Shown: positions 25,968 through 60,040, counted from the stretch's first letter. The stretch is DNA of 64,000 nt from Mytilus trossulus (GCF_036588685.1 NC_086374.1:35588001-35652000); one strand, 5' to 3'. The notes: generated from the letters alone by a model not told the origin. Program-made: numbers and translations.

Positions 25968-26245
25968 CTAGGTCCTTTTGTAAGTAATAACATACTCTGG
26001 ATAGCACATATTTAGTTCATAAACAAGAAATTCTCGGAAATTCCAGTGTCCGTCCACAACAACGGAATCATAGAACCAGTTCCCGGCTTGATCATGTGAC
26101 CTGTCACTACAGCGATCGTTTCTGCAGGTTTTACAAGGAGGACGCTGAAAAACTTCTTTGGAATTCAGAACAAACATGTCCCCTAGAAGCATACGCAATA
26201 AAATCATTTTTTTCTCCGACTTTATATCCCTGGATTGTGGTGAAT
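25968..26245 (-). CDS. Claudin-PARP fusion gene A, exon 5 (PARP catalytic C-terminal half, catalytic Glu)
   Basis: Acceptor ttttttgtcag; KMILLRMLLG...RPPCKTCRNDRC....H...YDSV...REFLVYE...CYPEYVITYKRT*. Confidence 0.9.
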
Positions 26246-27826
26246 CTGACAAAAAAAGAAAATATATCACAAATAACACACGTGTTTCTGTTACACGAAA
26301 AGGAATCAAAAAATATTTTGGATAAACGTCAGATAGATATTAACCAAACAACATTTGTTTACCAAACCAGACGTTGGGAGTTCATTATAAGGGTTCAGCG
26401 ATGAGTTTACGCGTTTACAGTTTACATTTAAGGAAGTTCGCTACTCAGTTTCAAAATAATAAGCTTTTCATAACACTAGTATATATTGATACGGGTTTAA
26501 TAAAGGAACCAAAAAAGCAAAAAACATAAATATAGGTGCTTGTTTTCAAGATATTAGCTATTTACATTTTGCGGGAAACTGTTCTTAATTGATTTTTCAT
26601 CGCTTTATCATTGACAAGTTTATGTACTGAAAAACTGTAAAAAACATAACAAAGATTTAATGAATAAAGACAACAGTAGTATACCGCTGTTCAAAACTTA
26701 TAAATCCATGGACAAAAAACAAAATCGGGGTAACAAACAAAAAACCGAGGAAAACGTATTAAATATATAGGAGGAGAACAACGACACAACACTTAAATTC
26801 TACACACACAGAAACGGACAAAGCATCAGACAAAATCCCACGAGAATAACAAATATAACATCAACACCAAATACATGACTTTGGGATAGACAAGTACCGT
26901 GACACGTCTTAGCGCAACGTGAATTTACACTCTAAAGATAAGAGAAAACAAACGACGCAACGTTAAAATGTAACACATAGAGAAACGAACTATAATATAA
27001 CAATGGCCATATTCCTGACTTGGTACAGGACATTTTTTAAGGAAAAACTGGGGGGGGGGGGGGGGGGGGGGGGGTCGAACCTGGTTTTGTGGCATGCCAA
27101 ACCTCCTAATAAGGCTTTTACAGATGGCTTATAATTATACATATGAATGATTTATAAAAAGAAAAGTGATGGTCAATGGGCAACATTTTTTAAGGCATTT
27201 AAATGGAAAAAACAAAGGATTCCAAAAATCTGACAAAAATCTTTAAAACATGACAATCAAACATCATGAAAGATGATAGAATATTTGAAACAATGCTTAT
27301 TTACCAGAAGTCAAGATCCATGAATAGAAGAAGCATGAAAACGATTGACGATTGTTTTTGACATGGAGCAAACACACACACATAACAGGATTAACCTACC
27401 AATTATTTGTTTTTGATACTCAAACCTCCTATAATATAGGTCAAGGGGAAATATGGATTCAGTAAAAATGGACGATATAACTACACTTCAGAAAATCTGT
27501 TCAATTGAACTTGTGAGTTTTGCTATTCTGTCTAGACTTTTTTTTTTTTTTTTTTATATCTGTACCTTTTTTATATTTTGATTTTCAAGAGATTTTGAAT
27601 CGGGAGTACCTGTTGTAGGTTCTAAAAACACTGTTTTATCTCCCTTTACAGTGAGTTCTTCATATAAGTTTTTAGGATGAATCTCCTTTATATTCAATTC
27701 AAAACATTTGATTAAATAAATGAAAACCTTTTACATAAACCCTTAAATATACAGGGAAACAAGCTTATTAGTGGTATCCACATAATAACTAAACCTTAAA
27801 TTATACAGACAATATATGTTCCTCAC

Positions 27827-28477
27827 CTGCATACGAATCGCTCTTGGTACTACTTTCTGCAGCATACACAGCTGGACCAAACATTCCCCTTTTATTTAAT
27901 CTGGCATCTAGGCCTTGAGTAACGATAGCATCAACTATTTCAACAGGCGTACCATGAAAGAGATAATATTCATTTACTGCGGGATACACGTCTCTTAAAA
28001 GTATGTCTTCGGTTGTTGTTATTATCGGCCCTTTTTGAGCCTTGCCTGTCTGTTCCAGCTTATTTAAGACCACTCCTCTACCTACCTTTCGAAAAAGTTT
28101 TGCTCGATTTTCAGCATATTTTTCGAATAATGGAGCATTTTCGACTCGTTCGACTTTGATGACCTGTAGCTTTTTATAGACTAGCGGATCTATACCTTTA
28201 GCATCTCTACCCACCCCAACTAGATCCTCCTTCCAAGTCCTTTGAACAAGTTTATCGATAGCAGTTTTTTCTAATGTTGACGCAGGTACCAGATGAAATA
28301 AGGAAGACGGATTTTGAGCTATCCATTCATCAATTCGTTTTGAATTGTCAAACTTTGTCCAGTACTTTGGAGTTTTTATTGGTCTTTTAGCCAGCCATAA
28401 ATAGTGACTTGGAAGTGATGAGCTTGGTCTAGGTTCTTCCTTTTGGGAAATATAAACAACTTCCACTTTATTTTCTC
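27827..28477 (-). CDS. Claudin-PARP fusion gene A, exon 4 (linker + PARP catalytic N-terminal half)
   Basis: ttttag| ... GCAG|gtgagg, 651 nt, phase 1-1; KVERVEN, NEYYLFHGT, GLDARL..RGMFGPAVYAAESSTKSDSY. Confidence 0.92.
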
Positions 28478-28723
28478 CTAAAATATATTCATTTGCTTAA
28501 GAACTATTTTGTTCATAAATATAATAGAAATTCAAAAACATTTAAAATCCAATAGCATCAAATGCTAGCAGCAGTAATGACGGTTCCTAGATAGCCTAGG
28601 ATACTAAAAATCAAGGCCTGTATTAAGTAACATTTTATTTTCAGTAACTTTGATTGCATGTTCAATAACAACGGCGGTAAAAGTTGAACATGGATAAAAT
28701 ATAAACTTTTGAAGTCATCTCAC

Positions 28724-28882
28724 CTTGATAGCTCATTATTATGATAGCCAAACCTCCACACAAGTACAGGAAAAATGCAATAGTTGCACATGCGAATGAA
28801 CCAGAAAGTCTGTGATCTTTTAGCCAGTCTTCTTTGTGATATGTTCCGCCATATACACTGATACTAATCATTAGTAAAAATG
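28724..28882 (-). CDS. Claudin-PARP fusion gene A, exon 3 (TM3, ECL2, TM4)
   Basis: tttcag| ... CAAG|gtgaga, 159 nt; AFLLMISISVYGGTYHKEDWL...SFACATIAFFLYLCGGLAIIIMSYQ; same length as exon 3 of gene B. Confidence 0.88.
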
Positions 28883-30099
28883 CTGAAATTGTAAAGTATT
28901 ACGGAGTCAAGACTCAATTTTCGGACATGTTAATGTTTACTTATGACGTTTATTTTTGTTGCACTAATTCAGTGCTCCTGTTGTTATTTTGTCCCTTTTA
29001 TAAGTTATAGTTTATGTGTCTCCCTCAGTGTTAGTTTGTAATCCGATTTTTTTCCCTCTCAATCGATACTGTTGCCTTTAATTACACAAACATATTCTTT
29101 CTTCCTACTTTAACTTGTTATCGCATGTATTGTTCTTTGCTTCTGTTTTGTACATTGACTATGCCGAGATGTATGGGGAAGGTGTATGTAACAAAAAGCT
29201 ACAAATGAGACACTCTTCATACTGGGGATTTTATTTGTATGTAATATGTAAAGCATCCCTGCTTTCATTGCGATTCTAGGGTAATCAGTATTTAATGTAG
29301 GATAACTCCGTTCACATATATTTGTTAAGTATTTGGATGTAAACGCATTTTTTACCACACCTGCTTAGTATTGTTTTTTTCCCTATTGTACAATACATAT
29401 AATGATAAACATTTGTGGACGACAAAGTGGAGAATATACAAGACAGCTTTTTCGTCGCCCTAACGCTAATACGAATACTAAATATAAAGTAGTAGTTCCA
29501 GTAAGACCCCTTTTTGGAATATAAATATGGTCCGTTTTTGACACTACAATTCACATATATATCGGGTTCTAGCAGCAGCATTAAGTCAGACTAAAGTACT
29601 GAAATCTTCAAAAATTTAGCGTTTTAGTTATATTTTGGACGGTTTCCGTCATAAATGAAAGTGGCGGCATTTGTGTTCATTCTTAATATTGAAATGTAAG
29701 TTGTATTTGATGATAATACATAACATATATGAAGGTTGAGGATGAACACGAATGTGGCCACTTTCATGTTTGACAAAAAAAAAAACACCTGAAAAGGGAC
29801 ATTTTTGGCATATTTTATATATATGTTATATTTAATTGTTGTTATGGTCAAATAATTGTGATGGCTTTTATATAACAATGGCAATTGTGTTTTGTTTTTC
29901 ATTAATCTATTTTCATTATCATTGGTGGAATGAAATTGTGCACATATGAAAATCGTCATTTGCAGATTTTATACCACCGCTTAAGATTAAAGATTTTTCT
30001 AAAATGATCATACATATAAAGGGAAGTGGTCAAGGTAAAAACTACGTTATAAAACCAGCAAATAGAGTCTGCAAAACTTTCTAATGCACGTTTACTCAC

Positions 30100-30245
30100 C
30101 TGTAATCAAATACGACATCCACACTAGTTTGTTAATTTTTATGCTGTCTTTATATTTCGAAACACACATTGTCGATATGACAACGACAGCGCATCCGATG
30201 CAAACATTGACATTATTTGGAAGGCACTTGTAGTTTTAATCCATC
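30100..30245 (-). pseudogene. Claudin-PARP fusion gene A, exon 2 (TM2), frameshifted in this sequence
   Basis: 146 nt versus 150 nt in gene B. Begins GWIKTTSAFQIMSMF and ends in another frame CIGCAVVVISTMCVSKYKDSIKINKLVWMSYLIT; donor G|gtgagt; premature TAA at 30141-30139. Confidence 0.8.
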
Positions 30246-32419
30246 CTTTATTAAAAGACAAAAGTTTTAATTCAGACATTGTCTTTCGCCCATTCCATTT
30301 CGTTTCATTGCATCGACTTATACCATAGAATATGAAGGAAAATGCACAAAGACCTGACTCTTTGTTTTCCCGGGTTTAAAAATTAATTGATCAAACATAT
30401 TTCTCATATTAGTATATGCGTATCTTTATGAAAATAATTCTTATTCATATAAAAAAGAAGATGTGGTATGATTGCCAATGAAACAACTATCCACAAAAGA
30501 CCAAAATGACACAAACATTAACAATTATAGGTCACCGTAGTCTGTTTTTAAAATTATGATTAGAACATTAACTGTTTTGATGGTAATTGACGTTGATGGT
30601 GTCTTAGGTTTAACTTACATGACATGCATATGTAATTCTGATATTGTACGACATATTATCACCTGACCGAATAAAGTTTATTAACGGGGATAATATGCAA
30701 AAACACAATATTTCAATATTTCTAAAAATATGTTAATTCCTGAAATGTACATAAGCAAATTTGTCTGGCAAAAACCATAAATTGACAGCAATTGATATTA
30801 TTACAGTAATCAACATCAACGTATCAATAAGCCATTATTTACAACGTACAGCTTGTGTCGTTGCCCTTTTCCTATTTTAAGAAATCAAAGTAGCACAATA
30901 CAAAGATTTATTTACTTCCAATATTCAACCTTTAAAATGCTGTTACTTAAGACTGCATATAAATTAATAAAAAAGGTATATATAATAGATAGATAATAGA
31001 TTAATCTTTTAAATGAATGCAATATTTGTGTTATGATCAAATATTATGCAATTAACGGCAAAATCTTGAATTTAGCTATATCATCTCTATACAGGAATTT
31101 CTTACGATATCTTAATCACGAAGCAGGAGCTACAAAAGGGTGTCTCAAACTATTGCTATCGTATTTTATCCTCGCATAAATCTGTAATTAGAACATCCTT
31201 ACCACATAAAAGTAGATAATGTTTGATAAGGTATAAAATTTGATCTATACATTCTTCCCAAAATCTGAGATAATGGCTCTAGGAACAACATACAAAGAAA
31301 ATCAACTCTCTCGTGTTATCCACGAAGAAGCTAATTTCGATTAAAAGTGGAAATTTCTTGTTAAATTTTGTAGACACAATTCACATTATAATAATTACAA
31401 AATTGTTGTATAAAACTAACACTTCATTATTTAAAAGAGTAGTCTGTTAGCTATCCATAAATACCACTTTTATAAATTTTTGAGGGTTATAAAGAAAATT
31501 ACAGCATTTTAAAACTGGGGAATTGGAGGTAGAACATCTTTGTATTGTGCTACCCTTAAAGACATTTGTATGTTTTAACTTACAAAAAACATATACTTTT
31601 CAAACTTTTATGTCACCTAGAACGACAAGGTATAAACCGCAAGAGGTAAGGACTACTTTACGTTATAAATCCATTATATAAAGCGTTGTTATCGGACTAT
31701 CCTGGATAAATTGAAGGCATTTAACAAACTTTACAATCAAAACCAGAAGGTAGATATATATATATAGGTAACAGGAAGTTTACCAACGTCAGATCAGTTA
31801 CAAAATTTGAGTTATTAATTAATTTCTGGAGGACCGCTTGAAACTAGTATATCTTTCATCAATCGCACGATTTCCAAGTTAGATAAAAAGGAATGTGTCA
31901 TATACAGGAACATAAAACCATACATTTTCAAATTAATCGTAGTTAAATCAGGAATGAGTGAAGAGCACAAAAAAGATCATGTCCGAAAAAGAAGGTACTT
32001 AATATTTTCTTTTACAATGTATATAAGAGATTGACACAATTAGCCAGTTGTGTATATACGATCTATACAAACAAATGGATATCGAGTAAACTAAATAATG
32101 TGAAACACTCACTCCATTAAAACATACCACGAAAATTACCTCCAATGAAACGAAAAATTGTCTTTCTATTTTGAATTTTACTCGGAGTTCAGCATTTTTG
32201 TGATATTACTTTTTGTCCATTGGAAGCGAAAGATATCATTCTGTTTTACCTTATGAACTTAATGAAAGTAAATATTTTCCATACTTTGGAAAAAAGAAAG
32301 ATAACATCGATATCCTCCCTAGTATATGAAAATAAGGGTGAATCATTGTTTACAAAACTTTGAATTTACGAAATGCGAAGGATATTGTACTTCAGATGAC
32401 CTTAGCTCTATATTACAAA

Positions 32420-32660
32420 AAAACTCATCATAAACACCAGGACTAAAATTTAATATTTACGCCAGACGCGCTATTCGTCTACAAAAGACTCATCAGTGAC
32501 GCTCGAATAAAAAATGTTTAAAATGTCAAATAAAATACTAAGTTGAAGAGCATTCAGGACCAAAAATTCCTAAAAGTTTTCCCAAATACAGCTAAGGTAA
32601 TCTATTCCTGAGGTAGAAAAGCCTTAGTTTTGTTCAAAAATTCAAAGTTTTGTTAACAAA
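32420..32660 (-). repeat. Retrozyme-like fragment with hammerhead motif (32459-32504) in intron 1 of gene A
   Basis: Minus strand: gagcgtcactgatgagtcttttgtagacgaatagcgcgtctggcgt. Confidence 0.75.
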
Positions 32661-33159
32661 ACTTTCTGCAATCTAGACCACTTGGACACCTAGACTTAAC
32701 CAAAAATTAAAATTTTGGTGGCCTAGTGTTTTTTGTCTCTTATCATTCTTTTAAGAATCGCATTAATATCTATTTATGTTTTTATGATATATGTAGATAT
32801 TTTATTCCATGTGTTTATAAATGGTGACGCACTAATAAACTATCTATCTATATAATATATCTACCTTTCCTCGTCAGTAGAATCTAGAGTTTAAACACAG
32901 TACATGATAAATATATTAGGCATGAAGATGGAACTAAATATAAATACTAGTATATAGAAGTCATATGAATAATGGCGTAGGACTTAATACCATTTACCAT
33001 AAACGATTTGCACACTAGTAGATTGATATTAAATCTTTAAATTACTAAAGTAACATAAATCGAATTAAAAATAAATGATTTGCAGACTGAAAATAATATC
33101 TAAATTGTTATCCGACGAGTCATTCCCACGGAAAATAATGTCTAAGCATATTTCATTAC

Positions 33160-33430
33160 CTGGTGTGTCTTTTCCAAGAAAATTGATGATACTTTCACAA
33201 CATTCGAAGGAGCCTCGGTAGGAAGTCAGCATTGAGCAGTGATCCCAAAGTCCTTGTCGTGATGAATCTGATTCCGACCATGACGAACTTACTATACCAA
33301 GGACTATGAACAAAAATCCTACTGGTATTATAAAAATTGTTAGACGAACATTCAGTGGAAACTCAAAAAAGTTATCAGTTCCTTTAATGAGAGCGTCTGA
33401 CCAGGACATCGAATTTTCAACAACTGCCAT
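33160..33430 (-). CDS. Claudin-PARP fusion gene A, coding exon 1 (TM1 + ECL1 claudin signature)
   Basis: MAVVENSMSW...IFIIPVGFLFIVLGIVSSSW..S..SRQGLWDHC...ECC; donor CCAG|gtaatg. The start ATG choice is uncertain. Confidence 0.88.
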
Positions 33431-44459: not shown

Positions 44460-45699
44460 CACCTGGAAAAAAATATTGAAACACCAAATTGAAATTAAAA
44501 TTAAAAAAAACTTTTTATTTTTTTTGTTAAAAAATTTGTTGAAATAGAACTAGTTAAACATTTTTTAAATATCACCTGACTTTAATCAATAATTATCGAC
44601 TCTATCAGATCTTATCTGCACATGCAGCTACTGTACTCATAAACACTAAAACAGCTGTTTTTATCCTCATTGCTTTCAACACTTAAAATAACCAAGTTTA
44701 TAAATTTATGTTATTGACACCTTGTAATTGGTCATCCAAAACTCATAACTGCAGCAAGATGGCAGATATCCAGCATAAGGGAAGCAGGTATGTCGCTGTG
44801 ATAATTGCACGTATTGTTAGTCATCACCATTCCACTATAAGTCGTTTTGAGAATAAAAATCAGTCGAAAAACGATGTTATAGACCCCCTATAAAATCTGC
44901 TAGGGAAAATAAGGCATAATGAAGTTTGGTCAGAAGGAAACCCATTGCAAACAATACAATCCTAAATACAGAATGGTGATCATGCAGGAGCCTTTTAACA
45001 AGAACTGTTCGAGATCGGCTCATCGCTACTGGTTATCGTGTGAAAATACCATTTCGGGGACCTTTGCCTACGAACAGACACACTCGTCAAAGTTGGAAAT
45101 TAGCATCGTGGAGGAAGATCCATTGTTCCAATGGAATTCGGTTTATGTTCCTTGGCCCCATCGTAGCCCGAATTTGAACCATATCGAGCATATATGGGAC
45201 ACTTTTGAGGGTAAAGGGCTTGAAAAGACACCCTAGTTCAAACAAGTCATGAAATAAACAATACCCTTCGTCAAGAATGGTATTGCTAGCTTAGCAACAA
45301 ATTAGTCGACTTATGGCAGGAATCAGAAGACGTTAAGATGCGGTTATCCGTTTGAATGGAGGCTGCGCACAAAATACTAATTCTTTGGCGTATAATGATT
45401 AACCATTATATGGACAATCATCAAAAGATTAATTTTGAAATGTCTGACATTGTAAATTTCGTACAGTAAAAGTTGTAAAATGCATTTTTTGGTACAAAAA
45501 AACACTTCATTTTGTTATAAAAATTTTGGTGAGATAAAACTTTATTTTTCAACATTTTTTTGTTTGTTTTAATGCCAATGTTATCATTAACTACTTTTCA
45601 ATATTATTTTACAAATATTTTATCATATTCCATTCAAAATAAGAGACTGATTTTTCAAGTTTTAAAAAATCAAGGTGTTGCAATACTTTTTTCCACGTG
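44460..45699 (+). mobile_element. Internally deleted Tc1/mariner DNA transposon, copy 2, inserted in a Penelope-like RT fragment
   Basis: TA-flanked TIRs cacctggaaaaaaatattgaaacacc / ggtgttgcaatacttttttccacgtg; HTH remnant IARIVSHHHSTISRF; PWPHRSPNLNHIEHIWD. Confidence 0.9.
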
Positions 45700-50513: not shown

Positions 50514-50748
50514 ATGTCTCAGAGCGAAATAAAAAACTCTTTAATTGTTGGAATAGACAATTTCTTTCAATTTCCTTTGCGTGTCCGAATGACAACAGCA
50601 ATAATTCCAGTAGGACTTATTTTCCTCATCGGTGGATTAGCTAGTCCGTCGTGGTCAAGATCAGAATTGTCTCAACTTGGACTGTGGAAATATTGTATAT
50701 TTTCTGACATATTAACTTGCTGTAATAATTTACCAGGCGGGTCACCAG
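50514..50748 (+). CDS. Claudin-PARP fusion gene B, coding exon 1 (TM1 + ECL1 claudin signature)
   Basis: MSQSEIKNSLIVGIDNFFQFPLRVRMTTAIIPVGLIFLIGGLASPSW..S..SQLGLWKYC...TCC; donor CCAG|gtaagg; 235 nt. Confidence 0.9.
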
Positions 50749-52907
50749 GTAAGGTTGATAAAAAGTTTATTTTATTTTATCTGTTTAAACGTGACTGTTG
50801 AAAAGGTATATTTTGCACAAACTTAACGGATTTCTACGCGCATTTCCATTATTTATTTCACTATTCTATATCCAAAAATAAAATATTGAAATTATCGTTT
50901 AGAATCTTCAAAGTTTTGTACAATGCAATTCGCTTATATTTTCAATAATCAGATAAACCATACAATATAAAAAAAGAAGATGTGGTATGTTTGCCAATAA
51001 GACAACTCTACACAAGAGACCCAAAATGACACAAAAAATAACAACTATAGATCACCGTTCCTTCAACAATTTGCAAAACCCATACCGCATAGTCATCTAT
51101 ATAAGGCCCCGAAATGACAATGTAAAACAATTAAAACGAGAAAACTAACGGCCTAATTTATGTACAAAAATTGTACGAAAAACAAATAAGTGACACATAA
51201 ACAAACGACAACAACTGAACTACACACTCGTGACTTGGGACAGGCACATACATACAGAATGTGGCGGTGTAAAACCTTGATCAACGAAAACCATGCACTG
51301 GTGGTATTTATGCTACGTGTGTTCGAATTCCAAAACATAGATAAACTAACATGTTTAACCCCCACATTATTTATGTATGTGCTTGACCCAAGTCAGGAGC
51401 CTGTAATTTAGGGGTTGTCGTTTGTTTATGTGTTACATATTTGTTTTTCGTTCATTTTTTATATGGTGTTACATTTTTTGCAATCACTAAGATGTCTGAT
51501 CAATCAATAGGCTATTCCACACTTTCACTACTCGGTTAGTTAAGAGTATTTTCTTTTTTCTAATCTGCCTCTGTTTCTAACCAATATCATCGAGTTGCCT
51601 GTTGTTGTCGAGCTTGTAATACAAATAAATAAACCTTATGTACACTCGAGTCATATACCCCTGTTGTTAATTTGTAGGTACCTGTCAATTCGCCTCTTAG
51701 CCTTCTCAATTTAAAAGTAGGAATTTCATAATTATCTATGGTTCTTTGTTTGAGTGAGCCTTGAGGTTGGGTAACACTGTTGTTGCTCTACGTTGGACGT
51801 TTACAATTGTCTCCATAGCTCTCTCTCTGTGTGGATTCAATACACTACTGTCATATTCAAGATGAGGACGGGCTAAGGTCTGAAATAGTAGACAGAAGCT
51901 TTTATAGTATGGATATTAAAAAAGTCCTTCTAAAATTTCAAACTAGTTTGTTTGCTTTATTGAATTGTGTCTGTATATGTTTATCCTACACAACTGAACT
52001 GTTTCTAGTGTGATTTCAGATCCATCGTATGTCGACATTTTATACTTGCTTTCTTGCACATAATTGGATTTGGTAGAAATTGGTAGAACTTTGCATTTGT
52101 CCGGATGGAAACATAAAAGCCTTTTTCAACCCATTTGAACTATTTATATCAATTTTCATTATGGAGTTGTCAATGTCGCTATGTAAAGATCTATACAGTG
52201 TCGAGTCATCTGCAAATATTCATTTTATTCTACTTATGAAAGAAAAAACATTGATTAGTTATAAAGACTTCGAGACTGACAAGGTATTGTAAACGTCAAC
52301 GGCCAAAATAAATTGAATTAGTGCAATATTAATTTCTTTTGTTGGAAAGAAATATGCTTATCAACAATAACTCATGTTAAATGCTTAGTACGAATCAAGT
52401 TGCGAATTTAATTTTTTAATAGCAATTTACTCAGTGCTCATAAATACAGTAATCTAATTTTGTACACTGTAAAAATCGCGATTAGAAATTATTCACATGT
52501 ATTTCATGTTTATTTCAAATCGTGTTTAGAATTGTATTTAATATCTAACCAAATGTCTCAGTGAGAACATTACATGTAAAAATGTTTTGAATTTGAACAC
52601 TTTTAAAAGTGTTTTATATTCTCAAAAAGATCCTAAACACAATCTTAAACACAACCTTAATATGTTTAGAAGAAGGGCAAAAGATACCAGAGGGACAGTC
52701 AAACTCATAGTTCGAAAATAAACTGAAAACGCCATGGCGAAAAAAAAAAAAAAAAAAAAATAGAACTGCGACACATTTGGACCAAAACGTGAAGACCTAT
52801 AAGTAAAAAAAAAGTGCACAAAATGTTTGTTTAGAACTATTCTTAGGTTCTAAATACTTTTTTTATTATTTATTAACAGATTTGCCTTTAAAAGCTAATT
52901 TTTGCAG

Positions 52908-53057
52908 GATGGGTAAAAGCAACAATAGTATTTCATATCTTTGGGATGTTTGGAGGAGCTGTTTGTCTCTTATTTACCATATTTACAATGTGTGTCTCGA
53001 AGTTCAAGTTTCACACTAGAGTCCATCATGCCATTTGGATAAGCAGCGCACTTACAG
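52908..53057 (+). CDS. Claudin-PARP fusion gene B, exon 2 (TM2); not in the ORF track
   Basis: tttgcag| ... ACAG|gtttta, 150 nt; GWVKATIVFHIFGMFGGAVCLLFTIFTMCVSKFKFHTRVHHAIWISSALT; homologous to 30100-30245. Confidence 0.87.
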
Positions 53058-54185
53058 GTTTTATTAAAATTTATTTGATCGCACATGTTTGTGGACATTG
53101 ATTGTCATCGTGTAAATCACTATAGATCGAAAACAAATACAAGATGTTTTTCTAGGATAAAACATCTTAAATAATTATATATGTCACGCTCTTATTTTTC
53201 TGAAACTCAATGAATGCTCCATTAACTTTATCATACGAATAAATATATTTATCCTGCAATAGGGTGTTCTACTATACAGATACAGCCCTACAGATATCGC
53301 TATGCTGTATCTGTAAACTATACTGAATGAGATATTGTTTTAAAGCTCCGCCCACTGAACTTGAATGTGTATGATTGTGTAACAAAAACAACTATGTCGA
53401 CGTCAATTTCAGCATGCATGTTTAGCAAATTTCAGTTCTGAAGCGTAGAACAACTCGTACACTCCTGTTTCAAATTGGACAATGTTTTGTTATTTATTTT
53501 TACTGTTGAAATTAGTTGTTATGTTAAAATAGATAATTTTTCACCTTGAGCGATGTATCATTGTTGACCATTCGAGGTTCTCGAATGTGTGATTAATGTA
53601 TCGTACTACTACACGGACCTCAGGGGATTTCAAATCGAAAATAAATGCAAAACATGTGTTTTTGTGTCTTTCAAAACAGAAATAATATACAGAAATTGCA
53701 GGAAAAGACAATACTGTTTAGTGTCTTTATATATCAGCTGTGTTTGAACTCGGCTAGAAACAGGTGTAGTATCTCGCTAAAAGCTCGCATACACCTAATA
53801 TTTCAAGACACTAAAACAGTTATTGTCTATGTACCGGCTTTCTGAAGAGAGTGTATGCGTCAATGCAAATCGTGTATCAAAATTAATCAAATCATATCAG
53901 AAACTTATTTATAGTCGCCAATTAATAACCAAAAACATAATCTCTTTGAACTTTTATAACCAACAAGTGCATACATATACAAAATATACTTACATAATAG
54001 ATATATAAGCATAAAAATCATACAACACATTATTTTAAGCACAGTAAGGCATTGCTTAATTAGGTTAGATAGGGTAAACGCAATAATACACATCGCATGC
54101 ATGCATGCATGAATGAGGATTGGATACGTAAGCTTAAATTTGTTTATAAAACAGAAAATGAATAAACAAAGACGAAGGAATACCG

Positions 54186-54800
54186 GTGCTTTGCTTTTGC
54201 GCCAATTGGCCTTTCATTTGCGCCCAAAACATCTTTCATTTGCGCCACAAACAATATTTCATTTGCGCCAAAATAAAACCTTTCAATTGCACCAATATTA
54301 CAGGTAAATACAGGTAATAGTATAAAACATATATATTTAGAAAAAAAGACTATTGATATAAATTAAAGTTTGTATCATTGATGTATTCATGTCTGAAAAA
54401 TTCCTGCTCTCAAGTGCATACCATATTGATAAAAGATAGTCCGTTTTTTCATGAACTGCAGTCCATTTCAGTTGTTATACTGGCTTTGCAAGGTTTTATA
54501 TATTTGGGGTACAAATAAACGACTTGGTTTCCATTTTTCAGAACGTATGGTCTGTAAACTCACCCCTATTATAAACCTTAGTGACTCTCGGCTTCAGAAA
54601 TGAGTGTGGCATTGAACTCACCAAATTATCCAGAGAAATACTGTAGAGACAAACCTTTTTGAGTAATGCATATTTAACGCTTCCGTTATTGTTTACCTGA
54701 ATTACCTGAAAAATGGCGCAAATGAAGTTTTTATTTTTTGGCGCAAATGAAATATAACCTTCTGGCGCAAATGAAAGATTGTAATTTTCAAAAATACTAC
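54186..54800. mobile_element. Foldback/MITE-like element with inverted subterminal repeat arrays
   Basis: Several ttcatttgcgcc(a) motifs on the left (54210-54270) and tggcgcaaatgaa motifs on the right (54714-54775); boundaries approximate. Confidence 0.6.
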
Positions 54801-55174
54801 TGGACTCCTTTCCAGACGGACTAAATCAGGGCGAAATGAAAACGTGAGTGTATCCTTTTGTGTATGCATTAGCCGCCATCAAATCCAGACAAAAACATGT
54901 CAAGAAAGGGAACAATAAATTTTCATAGCAAACCATCATCCTGGAAATTAGAATCCAAAACTGTTAAAAAGTGTTTTCCTGAGTTGAAGATTGTTGTTTG
55001 TTTGTGTTAAAACTAAAATTGTTATACGTTGCACATCAGTGTCCCTGAATACGTTCATGAAAAAGTTGGAGTCATACAGAAACAAGCAAGCAGCCATTCC
55101 TTTGTTTAAATGATCCGTAAAGAAATTTTTATATATTAATGCTTGGAAATGATACATTCCTAAATATTTTGTAG

Positions 55175-55333
55175 TATTTTGTCTTGCAATTAGTGTGGGG
55201 ATATTCAGTGCAAACTACCACAAAGAATCCTGGTTGAGCGGACATTACACATCTGCTGGTTTTCATATAACTGTCTGCGCATGTGTTGTTTTTTTAGCTA
55301 TATGTGTAGCTATGCTTATTTTTAGTTTCCAGG
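55175..55333 (+). CDS. Claudin-PARP fusion gene B, exon 3 (TM3, ECL2, TM4); not in the ORF track
   Basis: ttttgtag| ... CAGG|gtaagt, 159 nt; VFCLAISVGIFSANYHKESWLSGHYTSAGFHITVCACVVFLAICVAMLIFSFQ. Confidence 0.9.
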
Positions 55334-55533
55334 GTAAGTAGTCATCAGTTAATATACACATGTTAGCATAGTTGTTTTAGTAAATGTATTAACGTATTTC
55401 AATTAAATGAAAACTTTTAACACCGTAGTCAGTACCAACAATTGACTTGCAAAGAGTAAACCTAAACATAAATATGCCAAAATTATTACATCTTCAAATT
55501 TGCGATAGCAAATAAAGCCGCACATTTTTGTTC

Positions 55534-55625
55534 TTCCCTCAGCGGCTTTCGAACCCTTGCGTCTGTGGCATCGTGGCAAAACCACCTGCAACGTGCACAG
55601 AACCATAGACCACTCGACCACCTAG
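55534..55625 (-). mobile_element. Possible tRNA-derived SINE head
   Basis: Minus strand has A-box-like tggtcgagtgg and B-box-like ggttcgaaagcc; no clean cloverleaf. Confidence 0.4.
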
Positions 55626-56081
55626 TCTACATAAAAATAACGCTTTCGGTGTTCAATGTAGTCTATCCTCGATCATGGCTTTATCTAAGGTAGTTACACA
55701 GTAAATGATTATCGTGGCACGACGATTGTGTACTTTTCATGGCAGCTATTTTTGTCTGTCGTAAAGGTCGATAATGCAAATTGCTATGCCAGCCGCAAAA
55801 TCACATTTTAATTTTATTTTACTCGCCTAATATGTGACACCTTTATGACACACATTCTCCATTGGATAACACGTTGTTATACAGGGCTAACACCATATTT
55901 GAAGAATTCATCTCAAATTTATCCCATTAATGTTAGATATTCAACATTTTGCTTTTGCAAAGTTTTGTTCTTCTCTCAGCTGGATTAATCCCGGATGGTA
56001 TCTTTTACAGAATCTATCTATTGTATTCATTGTTAATTTGTTCCAGTGGCAAACATGCATGAAATATTTTTCACTTGTACG

Positions 56082-56471
56082 ATGATGAGTTTATTTACAA
56101 CCACTGGGTCTATGCCACTACCACTGTTGGAGATTTATTTTTCCAAGGGTATCAGAAGCCCAGTAGTCAGCACTTTTTGTGCTGACATGAACAATCATTG
56201 ATATGGTTGTATTTATAATTTAACTGTTTACAAAAGTTTTAATTTTTTGAAATACTAAGGCTTTCCTACCTCAGGAATAGATTACTTTAGCTGAATTTGG
56301 CAAACTTTTTAGGAATTTTGGTCCTCAATGCTCTTCAACTTCGTATTTTTTCCTGCCTTTTTAACTTTTTTGGATTCGAGCGTCACTTATGAGTCGTTTG
56401 TAGACAAAACGCGCGTCTGGCGTACTAGTATATAAAAAATTTAGTCCTGGTATCTATGATGAGTTTATTTA
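56082..56471 (+). repeat. Full-length ~374-nt retrozyme-like monomer with terminal redundancy and a mutated hammerhead (56378-56423)
   Basis: atgatgagtttattta at both 56082 and 56456; gagcgtcacttatgagtcgtttgtagacaaaacgcgcgtctggcgt. Confidence 0.78.
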
Positions 56472-57373
56472 TATTTGCAAATTTGCACTTCCATAAGAGG
56501 AATTGAAACTTTGCTTCGGTGACATCGTGTTAACACAACTGTACTTCTGTATGAGAGGTTGTTCAGGATGAAGGTTTAGGAAATTTAGACTGCCAGTGGA
56601 ATTTAACGTTTTTGGAAAGGGACAGACACCTTGCAACAGGACATCTACGGACCCCCCAAAGAGTTGTTAAAAGGGTTCCCAACGTGCAAAAAGTGTGGCA
56701 AACTCTGTGGCTGCGTACGAGTAATCATCACACACGGCCAGAAGGACGCCCACGCTTTTGCAAGGGTTTTACTGCAGGTCTTTCATATAGTTCACATATC
56801 ATACACTTATCTCTATAACTAGTATATACTTATTGATTTTGTGTAAGATTAAGAAGATTTTCCTGTTATCTTGCACTTTATAAAAAAACCTCTATCATAA
56901 GTTAACATGTCTGAAATATTTTACATTCCAAAACAATAAAATGTAGAAAGTAGGGTATATAAGTATACATCAAGAAATTACTAATGGCCAAATATTCAGG
57001 CGAAAACTGCTATGCTATTGCCATTGGTGCCATTTGGATGAAGGTCGACAGATTTTTAAACGGAATATTTCCTGATCCACTGACTAGGGATCATTCCAGT
57101 GATTTGTTTTCCGATCACTAAAAATTTTATACACGTAAAGTCGTTGATGTTGTGATGCGACTGTCTGTAGTGTTGGTTTACTGAAAGAGAACGATTTTGT
57201 TTATTTACTCAAGTGGCCATTTGCATGTTTCTGCACGAATTATTTGGGACTACGAATTAATTCATTCATAAAAACACAAATATTTCGCAGTGTACATTTA
57301 GTATAACATACGATTTTGTCAATAAAGAAAGTCATTTGTTGAACTGAAATATGTTGTTTTGGGTTTATTACAT

Positions 57374-57374
57374 G

Positions 57375-57405
<31 letters not shown>

Positions 57406-57413
57406 TAATAATA
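57374..57413. repeat. (AAT)n microsatellite
   Basis: taataataat... run with one interruption. Confidence 0.9.
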
Positions 57414-57515
57414 AAGAAGTAAAAGATTTTTAAAGTAAAAAGACAAGAACAATTTATGAAGTAACGACACATAAAAATCAAACAATATGATATTTAAAGA
57501 TATTTTGATTTTTAG

Positions 57516-58094
57516 GCCACAATAGAGTGCAAGACATTTTTAATAACATGACACCAATCAACTGGACCAAATACAATCAAGAAAGAAGTTTAGAAGCTTG
57601 GCTTTCACATATTGATCATGGGCTGGACAAAATAGAAATCAACGAAGCATCAGATAGAGAAAAAGACGCAATAGTGCAATTGATACGTCGTACATGGAAA
57701 CCCCATTTGGCTGGCAAAGGTCGTGACGCGCAACAAAGTGGATATTCACAAATGAAAGTAGTGAAGGTCGAAAGAATAGAAAATCCATCTCTTTTTTTGA
57801 AATATGCCCAGAATAGACAACATTTGCTTCGTCGTCTTGAAACTTCAAATCGACAATTTGAATTCTATGGAATGACAAAGCAAAGACCAATCGAAACAAC
57901 CGCAAACATGAACAAGAATGTATTTACAGATATACATTCTGAAATAAATGAGCATTACTTGTTCCATGGTACTTCAGATGCTACAGTTAGCGCCATTGCA
58001 CATGGTGGCCTAGATGCACGCTTAGCACGCGATGGTATGTATGGGCGAGGAATTTATGCGGCAGAATGTCCAACGAAGAGTGACCATTATGCAG
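57516..58094 (+). CDS. Claudin-PARP fusion gene B, exon 4 (PARP catalytic N-terminal half)
   Basis: ttttag| ... GCAG|gttatt, 579 nt; KVERIEN, NEHYLFHGT, GGLDARLARDGMYGRGIYAAECPTKSDHY. Confidence 0.92.
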
Positions 58095-59282
58095 GTTATT
58101 ATTTATCTTTGTAAGATAGATGTTCGTAATACGAATCAATTGTAACATACATGTACATGTAAATGTATATGAAATTAATGATAACCAAACATACCGCAGT
58201 CATCAAATTATCTACCCCCACCCCATGCACCCCCAAATGGTGAAATTATAGATGCCTTGTATTCTTGTTTTTATTTGTTTAAATAATTATAGATTATCGT
58301 TGATTATCTCAACGAGATTGATTTTCTCGCTTGAGCTGGTACAGCGAAAGTGAGAAAAGCAATCGAATTGAGATGACCAATGATAATCTGTTTATCGCTA
58401 TTTTACCTATGACGACGTTGTCAATTTCAATGTCAATTTCCTTAGCAACGCCACGTGGCCTCCTTAGTTTCTAGCGATAATTTTCCATCTCAAGCGAGAA
58501 GCATGATATGAAAATTATCACAAAAAAAGATCAAAGGAAAAATGCACAAAATAGCGATAAATACTTATACATTAATAAGAACACTAATATAACACAAACA
58601 GACATAATGAAAATGTAACATTAAAAGAATCATAACAACAACAGCCGTATAAACATACAAAACAACTGATTAACCATTCAAATCAAACATACAAATCAAT
58701 GCCGTGTGTTTTTTCATCAATGCGTCGCGCGGAGGAAAAATTTTAAATATTCAAGTTTGAAGCATGAATGAATCATCTTGTCGTCTGCAAGTTTAGACTT
58801 AACATATAAAAATTTTCAAAACAAAAAAAAATTTGCACCGGCACCTTTCTTTCGAAAAATGTTCGACAAGAATTATTTTTTCTAATGAACAATAATTTTG
58901 TCTAAACCTGCAATTTTAAATTCTATTCAGGAATAGGACTGTACACAGATGAGTTTTGATATATGTTGCTTCCATACGAACCGATCATCATGTTCTATGC
59001 ATACAGATATTATACAATCAAAACATGTGTATGAAGCCGATATAATACGTATTGACCTAAACCAAAGGCTACACCTGTTAAATTATTAATCAACAACTTT
59101 TGCATGAACAGTGTAACATCGGTAATTTCTAGGATATATTTAAGTAACACACCTGTGCAATGTACTGTTTTTGTCTATTTCAGCTCATTTGATTAAATCG
59201 TCGTCATGCTCTGATTGATTATCGATAAAACGATAATTTGTCTATCAAAAGTCTGAACTGACTGTAAAATATCGAATATATA

Positions 59283-59724
59283 CACTTGAAAAAAAGGATT
59301 GCAACACTTCCATTGTAAACAATGTAAAATGCCAAGATTGTCGAATATGTGTATAAATTTAGTTCTGCTAAATATTTTTTAACCATTTATGGTTTCAAAT
59401 TGAGTTCATTGTATCAACTTACTTTTCATCTACTATTTATGCTACATGGTTATGACATAACAGCTACACTCAAATATTTTTTGCGCTTTTCACAAAAAGT
59501 ACTTATTTTGCAGGACTCATTTTTTTCCAAAACAGTGGTTCTGCAGCAAATACAGATTTTAACGCATGAAACTCATTCAGAACTCTTTGAATATAATTTA
59601 ATAACACAAATTGTAAACCATATACGAATCAAAGTATTTGGTAAAACCCAAATTATACACATTCTAAAATCACGTCATTTTACATTGTTTTCAATCGAAG
59701 TGTTGCAATTCTTTTTTCAAAGTG
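59283..59724. mobile_element. Tc1-type MITE in intron 4 of gene B
   Basis: ta|cacttgaaaaaaaggattgcaacactt ... aagtgttgcaattcttttttcaaagtg|ta. Confidence 0.82.
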
Positions 59725-59765
59725 TATATTTACTAATTGTATTAAAATTGTTCAATATTTTTTAG

Positions 59766-60040
59766 GTAAAGATATGTTTAACCTTAAAATAATAGTAGTG
59801 CGCATGCTTCTAGGTGAAGTTTTTGTTACCAATGTCGGATACGCGTTCCAAAGACCACCTTGCAAACAATGTATAATGCAGGCTGGACATCTCGGTTTGT
59901 GTAACAATTCGGCTCATAAACAGGACATGTTTGACTCGGTCATGGGGGCTATTCATGGAAAACACAGAGAATTTATAACTTATGAACAAAACAGCTGTTC
60001 GAGTTATCCAGAATATATAATAACTTATAACAGAGAATGA
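59766..60040 (+). CDS. Claudin-PARP fusion gene B, exon 5 (PARP catalytic C-terminal half, catalytic Glu)
   Basis: ttttag|GT AAA GAT ATG; KIIVVRMLLG...RPPCKQC......LC....H...FDSV...REFITYE...SYPEYIITYNRE*. Confidence 0.92.

What the first reader, a model, noticed from the sequence alone, without database searches (positions are those of the whole stretch)
50514..60040. Claudin-like tetraspan fused to a tankyrase-like H-Y-E PARP domain: a candidate membrane-embedded ADP-ribosyltransferase
Seen in sequence: five exons (50514-50748, 52908-53057, 55175-55333, 57516-58094, 59766-60040) with GT-AG boundaries total 1398 nt and give one uninterrupted 465-aa ORF. The first ~180 aa have four hydrophobic helices and the W...GLW-x-x-C...C motif. 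The rest is a PARP catalytic domain (FHGT, GMYGRGIYAAE..TKSDHY, REFITYE). Established: W-GLW-C-C marks the claudin/PMP22/EMP family, whose N- and C-termini are cytosolic. Characterised PARPs are soluble or, like PARP16, tail-anchored, and I know of no characterised claudin-PARP fusion. Inference: the enzyme replaces the usual PDZ-binding tail and sits on the cytosolic face with access to NAD+. That could couple junction, membrane or pathogen sensing to ADP-ribosylation, like a receptor-enzyme.
Basis: partly seen in the sequence, partly recalled or inferred. Interest (0 to 1): 0.93.

Follow-up and report, generated by a model that had tools for sequence, protein, structure and literature searches.

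The report
Claudin-like membrane protein fused to PARP
A mussel gene that is really transcribed joins a four-pass membrane protein of the PMP22/claudin superfamily to an ADP-ribosyltransferase (PARP) domain that looks intact, an arrangement I found described in no paper and one that probably holds the enzyme at the inner face of a membrane.

Summary
The five exons all have AG/GT borders and give a 465-aa open frame. RNA-derived contigs from four public runs join exon 2 to 3 and exon 3 to 4 exactly at the predicted sites. One 1440-nt contig carries exons 2, 3 and 4 in one piece.

- **Conservation:** The same architecture is present in Mytilus edulis and M. galloprovincialis predicted proteins, 92% and 87% identical. 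It is also present in a diverged head-to-head paralogue in this window. This scan had already noted that paralogue pair.
- **A second lineage:** A further set of transcript-derived proteins has the same architecture.
- **N-terminal part:** It belongs to the PMP22/EMP/MP20/claudin superfamily. Evidence is the ESM Atlas match, a Pfam PF00822 hit at E 1.7e-10 in homologue P0166, and fold matches to MP20, TARPs and claudin-15.
- **C-terminal part:** It is a PARP catalytic domain with an H332-Y362-E443 triad. Its nearest relatives are mollusc macro-domain (PARP14-like) PARPs and PARP12, not specifically tankyrase.

A cytosolic orientation and enzyme activity are inferred. A sensing role is untested. 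I found no paper on this architecture. It is a new variant of a known kind.

The parts
50514..50748 (+). Gene B exon 1: start codon, short N-terminal tail, TM1, and most of extracellular loop 1 with the W...GLW..C...CC motif (50652-50723)
   Evidence: It is 56% identical to exon 1 of the paralogue (E 3.6e-13).
52908..53057 (+). Gene B exon 2: TM2, a K/R/H-rich intracellular loop, and the start of TM3
   Evidence: The splice joint 53057/55175 is seen in RNA contigs of X2 and X20.
55175..55333 (+). Gene B exon 3: the rest of TM3, extracellular loop 2 (NYHKESWL motif), and TM4
   Evidence: The joint 55333/57516 is seen in X1, X3 and X20, with a one-base variant in X2. E..WL is invariant in all 7 aligned fusion proteins.
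57516..58094 (+). Gene B exon 4: juxtamembrane linker, the P-x-x-W start of the catalytic region, and the first half of the PARP domain with His332 (57965-57967), Tyr362 (58055-58057) and TKSDHY
   Evidence: Pfam PF00644 at E 1.3e-11.
59766..60040 (+). Gene B exon 5: second half of the PARP domain with the C-x2-C...C...H cluster (59861-59917), catalytic Glu443 (59969-59971), the YPEYIITY end and the TGA stop
   Evidence: The AF2 model of the 92%-identical P0164 has pLDDT 85-97 here.
25968..33430 (-). Paralogue gene A, head-to-head with gene B. It has the same five-exon plan: 33430-33160, 30245-30100, 28882-28724, 28477-27827 and 26245-25968. All introns are phase 1 and H-Y-E is kept. Exon 2 is 146 nt and changes reading frame part-way.
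   Evidence: The closest full-length relative is P0166, 56-64% identical on exons 4 and 5.

Best explanation
This is an expressed protein-coding gene of a Mytilus mussel. It encodes a multi-pass membrane ADP-ribosyltransferase.

**Structure.** Residues ~25-180 form a four-helix tetraspan of the PMP22/EMP/MP20/claudin superfamily. Its first extracellular loop carries the conserved cysteines. Residues ~190-465 form a complete PARP catalytic domain with His332, Tyr362 and Glu443 and no regulatory domain.

**Topology (inferred).** Tetraspans of this family have both ends in the cytosol. The PARP domain therefore most likely hangs from TM4 on a ~15-residue linker at the cytosolic face of the plasma membrane or a secretory-pathway membrane.

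**Activity (inferred).** There it would use cytosolic NAD+ to ADP-ribosylate itself and membrane-proximal proteins. Whether it makes mono- or poly-ADP-ribose cannot be read from the sequence.

**Origin.** The gene most likely arose by exon shuffling. A two-exon PARP cassette that is entered in intron phase 1, and that is shared with the expanded mollusc macro-domain (PARP14-like) PARPs, was joined to a three-exon PMP22-like gene.

**Status of each claim.** Shown: the gene model, its transcription, both domain identities, conservation, and a second lineage with the same architecture. Inferred: topology, activity and membrane-restricted targets. A role in innate immunity is a guess by analogy with PARP12 and PARP14.
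For: **The gene is real and transcribed as one unit**
- The ORF and splice sites check out.
- Spliced RNA contigs from 4 runs of 3 studies support the junctions, including one contig with exons 2, 3 and 4 joined.

**It is under constraint**
- Of 18 exonic variants seen in those contigs, 13 are synonymous and 5 are not.
- The 4-TM part is 96-97% identical to the Mytilus orthologues, against 80-90% for the PARP part.

**The architecture recurs**
- Orthologues of the same length and architecture: P0164 (M. edulis, 428/465 identical) and P0001 (M. galloprovincialis).
- Paralogue gene A has identical intron phases.
- P0166, P0121, P0165 and the 5'-truncated P0096 also carry it.

**The tetraspan is claudin-superfamily**
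- The Atlas's own model of P0164 residues 15-185 aligns at TM-score 0.76-0.82 to PMP22_Claudin, PERP, pickel, Clc-like and LHFPL clusters. Feature scores are 0.90-0.92.
- Pfam PF00822 scores 41.5 bits, E 1.7e-10, over profile positions 7-160 of 161 in P0166.
- The AF2 model of P0166 shows TM1, three strands, TM2, TM3, a strand, then TM4.
- That model matches a designed claudin fold (Z 11.8), TARP gamma-7 (11.7), MP20 (11.4) and claudin-15 (10.4).

**The PARP domain looks intact**
- Pfam matches it. AF2 pLDDT is 85-97. Foldseek gives E 1e-15 to tankyrase-1/2 and PARP12.
- H and Y are invariant in 49 of 49 aligned rows. E is present in 21 of the 28 rows that reach that column.

**Exon shuffling is plausible**
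- Three PARP paralogues fetched from this genome end their large exon at the same ...Y-A|G donor.
- The one paralogue whose acceptor I read (L011) is also entered in phase 1.
- At least 16 such exons exist in the genome, and the only two I found next to tetraspan exons are genes A and B.
- A tetraspan paralogue at G000:C2:21.855 Mb has no PARP exon within ~11 kb downstream of its third exon.
Against: - No protein-level, localisation or activity data exist.
- The runs are only guessed to be RNA. The inference rests on GT..AG skips and empty introns.
- Pfam does not recognise the tetraspan of this gene's own orthologue above its cut-off (P0164, PF00822 at 10.8 bits, E 0.47).
- AF2 models the TM part with low confidence: pLDDT 30-66 for P0164 and 50-70 for P0166.
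- An H-Y-E triad is necessary for glutamate-dependent catalysis but does not prove it.
- Paralogue gene A is frameshifted in this assembly, so family members can decay.
- The joined 465-aa protein of this window was not itself searched or folded. The 92%-identical P0164 stood in for it.
Confidence: 0.7

Rival explanations
1. Receptor-type enzyme. The extracellular loops of the tetraspan sense cell contact, membrane damage or a pathogen ligand, and they control the cytosolic PARP domain allosterically or by clustering.
For: - The tetraspan is the most conserved part of the protein (96-97%, against 80-90% for the PARP domain).
- Loop motifs (W, GLW, C, CC, E-x-W-L) are invariant across three diverged subfamilies. 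That is more than a plain anchor would need.
- The architecture occurs in two PARP lineages that are not sisters.
Against: - There is no evidence of any ligand or of regulation.
- The conserved loop motifs are those of the whole PMP22/claudin superfamily. They may reflect only folding and disulfide formation.
Confidence: 0.15
2. Pseudo-enzyme or scaffold. The PARP domain binds NAD+, ADP-ribose or partners but does not transfer ADP-ribose, as in PARP13 or PARP9. The protein then acts as a modified tetraspan adaptor.
For: - Catalytically inactive PARP domains exist in the related PARP13 and PARP9 (established knowledge).
- The B-type PARP domain sits on a long branch, 1.24 changes per column.
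- That domain evolves faster than the tetraspan.
Against: - H332, Y362, E443, the HG[ST] motif, the TKS motif and the second Tyr are all intact.
- They are conserved in the orthologues and in both other subfamilies.
Confidence: 0.1
3. Gene-model artefact. A claudin-like gene and a PARP gene are adjacent, and the fused ORF is a coincidence or a read-through.
For: - Some Mytilus edulis annotations in the same 90% cluster are PARP-only 203-aa models: P0151 'PARP12-like' and P0156 'PARP7S'.
Against: - The exon 3-4 joint appears in contigs of four runs, and one contig carries exons 2, 3 and 4.
- All introns are phase 1.
- The same fusion is present in RefSeq models of two species, in the paralogue, and in independent transcript assemblies.
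Confidence: 0.03
4. Ecto-enzyme. The PARP domain faces the outside of the cell or the lumen.
For: None specific. Extracellular ADP-ribosyltransferases do exist, namely the ARTC family (established knowledge).
Against: - An even number of TM helices and the family's N-in/C-in topology argue against it.
- The TM2-TM3 loop has 3 K/R and no D/E.
- ECL1 carries the conserved disulfide cysteines. In the P0121 type it also carries N-x-S/T sequons.
- The PARP domain has a conserved C-x2-C...C...H cluster and free cysteines, which suit a reducing compartment.
Confidence: 0.02

Closest known systems
PARP16 (ARTD15), the tail-anchored ER mono-ADP-ribosyltransferase (PMC3372510)
   Same: It is a PARP-family catalytic domain held on the cytosolic face of a membrane by an integral membrane segment. 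It is the only characterised membrane-integral PARP I know of.
   Different: - PARP16 has one C-terminal tail anchor after the catalytic domain, its own N-terminal helical domain, and an H-Y-Y triad (from my own knowledge).
- Here a four-pass claudin-superfamily domain precedes the catalytic domain, and the triad is H-Y-E.
- Pfam gave no ARTD15_N match on the whole-protein proxy P0164.
Mollusc macro-domain PARPs (PARP14-like), for example P0167 'PARP14-like' of Mytilus californianus
   Same: - These are the closest relatives of the catalytic domain.
- They share the P-x-Y-W start, the C-x2-C...C...H cluster and the YPEY(I/L)ITY end.
- The two-exon structure and donor position are the same.
- Many also have Glu at the third triad position.
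   Different: They carry macro, RRM or KH domains at the N-terminus and no membrane segment. This gene has no macro domain.
PMP22 / EMP / MP20 / PERP and other non-junctional members of the claudin superfamily (Pfam PF00822)
   Same: - Four TM helices, the W-GLW-C-C loop motif and a domain size of ~160-185 aa.
- Predicted fold matches: MP20 at Z 11.4 with 154 of 166 residues aligned, and Atlas TM-scores of 0.76-0.82.
   Different: Known members end in a short cytosolic tail. None I know of carries an enzyme domain. Sequence similarity of this gene's own tetraspan is below Pfam's cut-off.
Tankyrase-1/2 catalytic domain
   Same: An H-Y-E triad, no PARP regulatory helical domain, a top Foldseek match (E 1e-15), and a similar C-terminal YPEYLITY-type strand.
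   Different: - There are no ankyrin repeat clusters or SAM domain.
- Sequence similarity is weaker than to PARP12.
- The Cys/His cluster sits after the central beta-strand, not where I recall tankyrase's zinc site to be (from memory, not tested).

Membership tests
PMP22/EMP/MP20/claudin superfamily (Pfam PF00822 and clan) | Four transmembrane helices with both termini on the same side | tested here: met
   There are four hydropathy peaks at residues 22-40, 85-103, 121-139 and 160-178. Four long helices appear in both AF2 models. The side of the membrane was not tested.
PMP22/EMP/MP20/claudin superfamily (Pfam PF00822 and clan) | W ... G-L-W ... C ... C motif in the first extracellular loop | tested here: met
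   The motif is at residues 47-70. W, GLW, C and CC are invariant in all 7 aligned fusion proteins.
PMP22/EMP/MP20/claudin superfamily (Pfam PF00822 and clan) | Pfam profile score above the curated cut-off on this gene's own protein | tested here: not met
   P0164, 92% identical to the window protein, scores 10.8 bits (E 0.47) against a cut-off of 26.7, although the match spans profile positions 10-156 of 161. Single exons give no hit. This is an operational threshold, not a structural feature.
PMP22/EMP/MP20/claudin superfamily (Pfam PF00822 and clan) | Pfam profile score above the cut-off in a demonstrable homologue of the same domain | tested here: met
   P0166 scores 41.5 bits at E 1.7e-10 over profile positions 7-160 of 161. 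P0166 aligns with P0164 at 38% identity over 94% of its length. Gene A exon 1 matches gene B exon 1 at E 3.6e-13.
PMP22/EMP/MP20/claudin superfamily (Pfam PF00822 and clan) | Claudin fold: a left-handed four-helix bundle with a beta-sheet formed by the extracellular loops | tested here: met
   The Atlas model of P0164 gives TM-scores of 0.76-0.82 to claudin-superfamily clusters over residues 15-185. The AF2 model of P0166 has strands in ECL1 and ECL2. It matches solved MP20, TARPs and claudin-15, -19 and -4 at Z 8.6-11.7. Confidence is moderate, because model pLDDT is 50-70 and the helical-bundle background is high.
Classical tight-junction claudins | Short cytosolic C-terminal tail ending in a PDZ-binding motif | tested here: not met
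   TM4 is followed by ~285 residues of linker and PARP domain, ending in ...YNRE.
PARP / ARTD family (Pfam PF00644) | Catalytic-domain profile match above the cut-off | tested here: met
   Exon 4 alone scores 44.8 bits at E 1.3e-11. P0164 scores 50.3 bits.
PARP / ARTD family (Pfam PF00644) | H-Y-E NAD+-binding and catalytic triad | tested here: met
   His332, Tyr362 and Glu443 are present. H and Y are invariant in 49 of 49 rows, and E is present in 21 of 28 rows. All three are invariant in the 7 fusion proteins. Equivalence of Glu443 with tankyrase's catalytic Glu rests on motif alignment from memory.
PARP / ARTD family (Pfam PF00644) | ADP-ribosyltransferase fold | tested here: met
   The AF2 model of P0164 residues 190-465 has pLDDT 80-98. 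Foldseek gives E 1e-15 to tankyrase-1/2 and 7e-15 to PARP12, with target TM-scores of 0.71-0.82.
PARP / ARTD family (Pfam PF00644) | NAD+-dependent ADP-ribose transfer | not testable with these tools
   This needs an enzyme assay.
Tankyrases | Ankyrin repeat clusters and a SAM domain before the catalytic domain | tested here: not met
   Pfam finds only PARP, plus weak membrane-family hits, on P0164 and P0001.
Tankyrases | Catalytic domain closest to tankyrase | tested here: not met
   PARP12 scores E 9.5e-9 against 5e-5 for tankyrase-2. The nearest library relatives are macro-domain PARPs. By structure, tankyrase and PARP12 tie.
Macro-domain PARPs (PARP9/14/15 type) | One or more macro domains | tested here: not met
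   There is no Macro hit on P0164, P0001, P0166 or P0121. Only the catalytic domain is of this lineage.
PARP16 | Single C-terminal tail anchor and the ARTD15 N-terminal domain | tested here: not met
   The membrane segments are N-terminal and number four. The C-terminus is the soluble YPEYIITYNRE strand. There is no ARTD15_N Pfam hit.

The most novel reading that the evidence does not exclude
Claudin-superfamily tetraspans have been joined to PARP catalytic domains at least twice independently. The result would be receptor-like enzymes in which events at the extracellular loops, such as cell contact, membrane injury, or a pathogen or toxin binding the loops, switch on ADP-ribosylation of membrane-proximal targets. 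That would be a signalling logic not yet described for ADP-ribosylation.
Probability: 0.15. Interest if true: 0.85.

Novelty: new variant of a known kind. Interest (0 to 1): 0.62.

Why it matters
- **A gap in PARP biology.** All characterised PARPs are soluble or, like PARP16, tail-anchored. A PARP domain built onto a multi-pass claudin-superfamily protein would confine ADP-ribosylation to a membrane surface. It would also link it physically to a protein family known for cell contacts, membrane organisation and channel regulation.
- **Signs that it is functional.** The gene is transcribed, under constraint, and conserved across Mytilus species. A second PARP lineage has the same architecture.
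- **It is testable.** The catalytic triad is intact, so the hypothesis can be checked directly by topology mapping, an auto-modification assay and proximity labelling.
- **Evolutionary interest.** It illustrates how a two-exon, phase-1 PARP cassette has been shuffled onto different N-terminal modules during the bivalve PARP expansion.
- **Limits.** The protein already sits in public databases as 'uncharacterized protein' or 'Poly [ADP-ribose] polymerase'. Both of its domains are well-known kinds.

Tried and rejected
**Steps that gave little or nothing**
- Pfam on single exons gave nothing for exons 1, 2, 3 and 5. They are too short.
- The search for homologous proteins on the N-terminal region of P0001 and of P0121 returned only each query and one close relative. 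The length window excludes stand-alone ~186-aa tetraspans, so this says nothing about them.
- AF2 of P0164 with 49 rows gave the TM part pLDDT 30-66, unusable for a fold search.
- AF2 of P0166 with 7 rows gave an unusable PARP part (pLDDT 21-46), but the TM part was just usable.
- Adding single-exon translations to the alignment (A2) misplaced them, so that alignment was discarded.
The organisms behind P0121, P0165, P0096, P0166 and P0100 therefore remain unknown.

**Readings rejected**
- Tankyrase membership.
- Two separate genes.
- A single origin of the PARP domains of all fusion proteins. The AU test gives p 5e-85 and a log-likelihood difference of 87.9.
- An intronic gene or RNA under the very high RNA depth at 56250-56630. 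It is a ~220-bp interspersed repeat with at least 4000 first-look candidates in the genome. The only Rfam hit is far below threshold.

**Step deliberately left out**
- The joined 465-aa protein of this window was built only inside local scripts, to check the frame and to compare it with database proteins. It was not sent to any search or fold tool. Exons were searched by reference, and P0164 served as the whole-protein proxy.

Full report

Yes. The five stated exons all have AG before and GT after every internal border. They sum to 1398 nt and read as 465 codons plus TGA with no internal stop. All four introns are phase 1. Exon 4 alone matches Pfam PARP (PF00644) at E 1.3e-11.

Hydropathy gives four membrane-length peaks at residues 22-40, 85-103, 121-139 and 160-178. 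The W...GLW..C...CC motif is at residues 47-70. His332 lies in FHGT, Tyr362 in GIYAAE and Glu443 in REFITYE.

**2. Is it one gene?**

I laid the contigs of four public runs on 52700-58300. The runs are X1-X3 of organism A and X20 of organism F, from three studies.

- Introns are empty apart from repeats.
- GT..AG skips occur exactly at 53057/55175 (X2, X20) and at 55333/57516 (X1, X3, X20). X2 has a one-base variant of the second joint.
- One 1440-nt contig of X20 carries exons 2, 3 and 4 contiguously. It leaves 268 nt and 279 nt beyond them. These lengths fit exon 1 plus ~36 nt and exon 5 plus ~6 nt. That is an inference from length only.

The runs are only guessed to be RNA, but intron-skipping contigs with empty introns are what spliced RNA gives.

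Of 18 exonic variants seen in these contigs, 13 are synonymous and 5 are not. That ratio fits purifying selection.

**3. Relatives**

An exhaustive HMMER search with exon 4 found P0001. It is 463 aa and 86% identical over exon 4, and is named 'uncharacterized protein LOC143064382' of Mytilus galloprovincialis. A further search found P0164, a 465-aa 'unnamed protein product' of M. edulis. P0164 is 428/465 identical to the window protein. The window is therefore from a Mytilus mussel.

The joined protein has no reference, so I did not send it to any search or fold tool. Exons were searched by reference, and P0164 served as the whole-protein proxy.

Within the window, a paralogue (gene A) lies head-to-head on the minus strand.

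- Its exons are 33430-33160, 30245-30100, 28882-28724, 28477-27827 and 26245-25968.
- It has the same exon order and the same phase-1 introns, and it keeps H-Y-E.
- It is 37-56% identical to gene B.
- Its exon 2 is 146 nt where 150 nt is expected, and it changes frame part-way. Gene A is thus broken in this assembly, or the assembly or allele carries an error.
- Earlier notes of this scan (s1-820641, s1-821074) say the same. I confirmed both.

Three further fusion proteins come from transcript assemblies of unnamed organisms.

- P0166 (473 aa) is of the gene-A type, 56-64% identical to gene A exons 4 and 5.
- P0121 and P0159 belong to one cluster. P0165 is 65% identical to P0121 in the tetraspan part.
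- P0096 is a 5'-truncated member of the P0121 type. It retains TM3, the E-x-W-L loop motif and TM4.

In the seven-protein alignment the tetraspan invariants are W, GLW, C, CC, P-x-W and E-x-W-L. The PARP invariants include H, Y, E and a C-x2-C...C...H cluster.

**4. What is the N-terminal part?**

Sequence profiles are weak on this gene's own protein. For P0164, PF00822 scores 10.8 bits at E 0.47, although over profile positions 10-156 of 161. The P0121 type gives repeated sub-threshold hits to TMEM37, Claudin_2 and L_HMGIC_fpl, the same families that surface in the Atlas claudin-superfamily matches below.

The homologous P0166 is clearly above the cut-off. PF00822 scores 41.5 bits at E 1.7e-10 over profile positions 7-160 of 161.

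The ESM Atlas holds P0164.

- By language-model features, residues 1-185 are nearest to mollusc PMP22/EMP/MP20/claudin clusters, PERP, EMP1, TMEM37 and LHFPL. Scores are 0.90-0.92 with 178-196 shared features.
- By the Atlas's own model, residues 15-185 align at TM-score 0.76-0.82 to PMP22_Claudin, PERP, pickel, Clc-like and LHFPL clusters.

My AF2 model of P0166 is poor overall (mean pLDDT 44), but the tetraspan part has pLDDT 50-70. It shows TM1, three strands, TM2, TM3, a strand, then TM4. An exhaustive structural comparison put claudin-superfamily structures in nine of the top eleven places.

| Match | Z |
|---|---|
| Designed claudin fold | 11.8 |
| TARP gamma-7 | 11.7 |
| MP20 | 11.4 |
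| TARP gamma-8 | 11.0 |
| GARLH4 | 10.5 |
| Claudin-15 | 10.4 |

Claudin-19 and claudin-4 follow at Z 9.0 and 8.6. Z values in this range can occur by chance for helical bundles, so I weigh this as moderate support. Together with the Pfam and Atlas results it settles superfamily membership.

This is not a classical claudin. The first loop is short (~37 aa), and the PDZ-binding tail is replaced by the PARP domain.

**5. What is the C-terminal part?**

It is a complete PARP catalytic domain. AF2 pLDDT is 80-98 over residues 190-465 of P0164.

- By fold it matches tankyrase-1/2 (E 1e-15) and PARP12 (E 7e-15) equally well.
- By sequence the best solved relative is PARP12 (E 9.5e-9), then ZAP, then tankyrase-2 (E 5e-5).
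- The closest proteins in the 1.8-billion-protein library carry macro domains and PARP14-type RRM/KH domains.
- In a careful maximum-likelihood tree, the A and B types sit together (support 72/63). They are sister to P0167, a 'PARP14-like' macro-PARP of M. californianus, inside a group of macro-PARPs.

'Tankyrase-like' is therefore only true of the triad and of the lack of a regulatory domain.

Glu at the third triad position is common in this mollusc clade, in 21 of the 28 rows that reach that column.

A C-x2-C...C...H cluster (residues 407-425) is conserved in 17-19 of 21 rows for its three cysteines and in 12 of 16 rows for the histidine. It is a candidate metal site.

**6. Origin**

- The genome holds at least 16 exon-4-like PARP exons. 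The only two I found next to tetraspan exons are genes A and B.
- Three other paralogues end this exon at the same ...Y-A|G donor. The one whose acceptor I read is entered in phase 1, like gene B.
- A tetraspan paralogue at G000:C2:21.855 Mb shares the N-terminal GIDNF motif and the exon plan. It has no PARP exon within ~11 kb downstream of its third exon.
- This fits exon shuffling of a two-exon PARP cassette onto a PMP22-like gene.

The PARP domains of the P0121, P0165 and P0096 type fall in a different, well-supported clade (100/98 and 95/96). A tree that forces all fusion proteins together is rejected (log-likelihood difference 87.9, p-AU 5e-85). So either the fusion arose at least twice, or the PARP cassette was exchanged. 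A tree of the tetraspan parts would decide this, but it needs stand-alone relatives that I could not fetch.

**7. How it most likely works**

From established knowledge, PMP22/claudin tetraspans have both termini in the cytosol. Here the TM2-TM3 loop has three K/R and no acidic residue. The first loop holds the conserved cysteines, and in the P0121 type it also holds N-glycosylation sequons. The PARP domain has a Cys/His cluster that suits a reducing compartment.

I therefore infer that the catalytic domain sits on the cytosolic face, ~15 residues from TM4, with access to NAD+. There it would modify itself and nearby membrane-associated proteins.

The tetraspan is the best-conserved part, 96-97% against 80-90% between Mytilus orthologues. 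This hints that it does more than anchor. A sensing or receptor role remains a guess, and so does an immune role suggested by analogy with PARP12 and PARP14.

**8. Novelty**

Full-text searches combining claudin or PMP22 with PARP terms, Mytilus with PARP, and PARP14 with bivalve found no description of this architecture. The only membrane-integral PARP in the literature I found is the tail-anchored PARP16 (PMC3372510).

The proteins exist in RefSeq and UniProt as uncharacterised predictions. This is a new variant of a known kind: a new domain architecture built from two well-known families.

**9. Limits**

- There are no protein-level data.
- The runs are only inferred to be RNA.
- The TM models are of low confidence.
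- The whole-protein searches used a 92%-identical proxy.

Noticed in passing
window 25968-33430 (-), exon 2 at 30245-30100: Paralogue gene A has the same five-exon tetraspan-PARP plan and an intact H-Y-E triad. Its exon 2 is 146 nt instead of the expected 150, and it switches reading frame inside TM2. This could be a pseudogene, a broken allele or an assembly error.
   Followed up: partly
window 56250-56470 (intron 3 of gene B): A ~220-bp interspersed repeat reaches RNA-contig depth in the thousands in all four runs. The genome holds at least 4000 first-look candidates at 86-90% identity. It explains the only deep intronic signal.
   Followed up: yes
window 59861-59917 (residues 407-425): A C-x2-C...C...H cluster lies inside the PARP domain. 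Its three cysteines are conserved in 17-19 of 21 related rows, its histidine in 12 of 16, and all four are invariant in all 7 fusion proteins. It is a candidate metal-binding insert of this mollusc PARP clade.
   Followed up: partly
L001:5131-5364 and L001:8762-8917 (G000:C2:21855131-21858917): A tetraspan paralogue shares the N-terminal GIDNF motif and the exon plan. It has no PARP exon within ~11 kb downstream of its third exon. It is a possible representative of the parental stand-alone gene type.
   Followed up: partly
protein P0100 (664 aa, transcript assembly, organism unknown): This is another membrane-bound PARP of the same catalytic clade with a different N-terminus: a ~230-aa probably extracellular region followed by a block of several hydrophobic helices. 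Membrane attachment of this PARP cassette is thus not limited to claudin-like domains.
   Followed up: no
proteins P0151 and P0156 (203 aa, Mytilus edulis): PARP-only models named 'PARP12-like' and 'PARP7S' fall in the same 90%-identity cluster as the full-length fusion protein. P0151 has an accession adjacent to that of the full-length P0155, on the same contig. They may be partial duplicates or split gene models.
   Followed up: no
window 44919-45236 (+): A 105-aa ORF in the 17-kb spacer between the two paralogues ends in a stretch that looks to me like a Tc1/mariner-type transposase remnant. This is by eye only.
   Followed up: no
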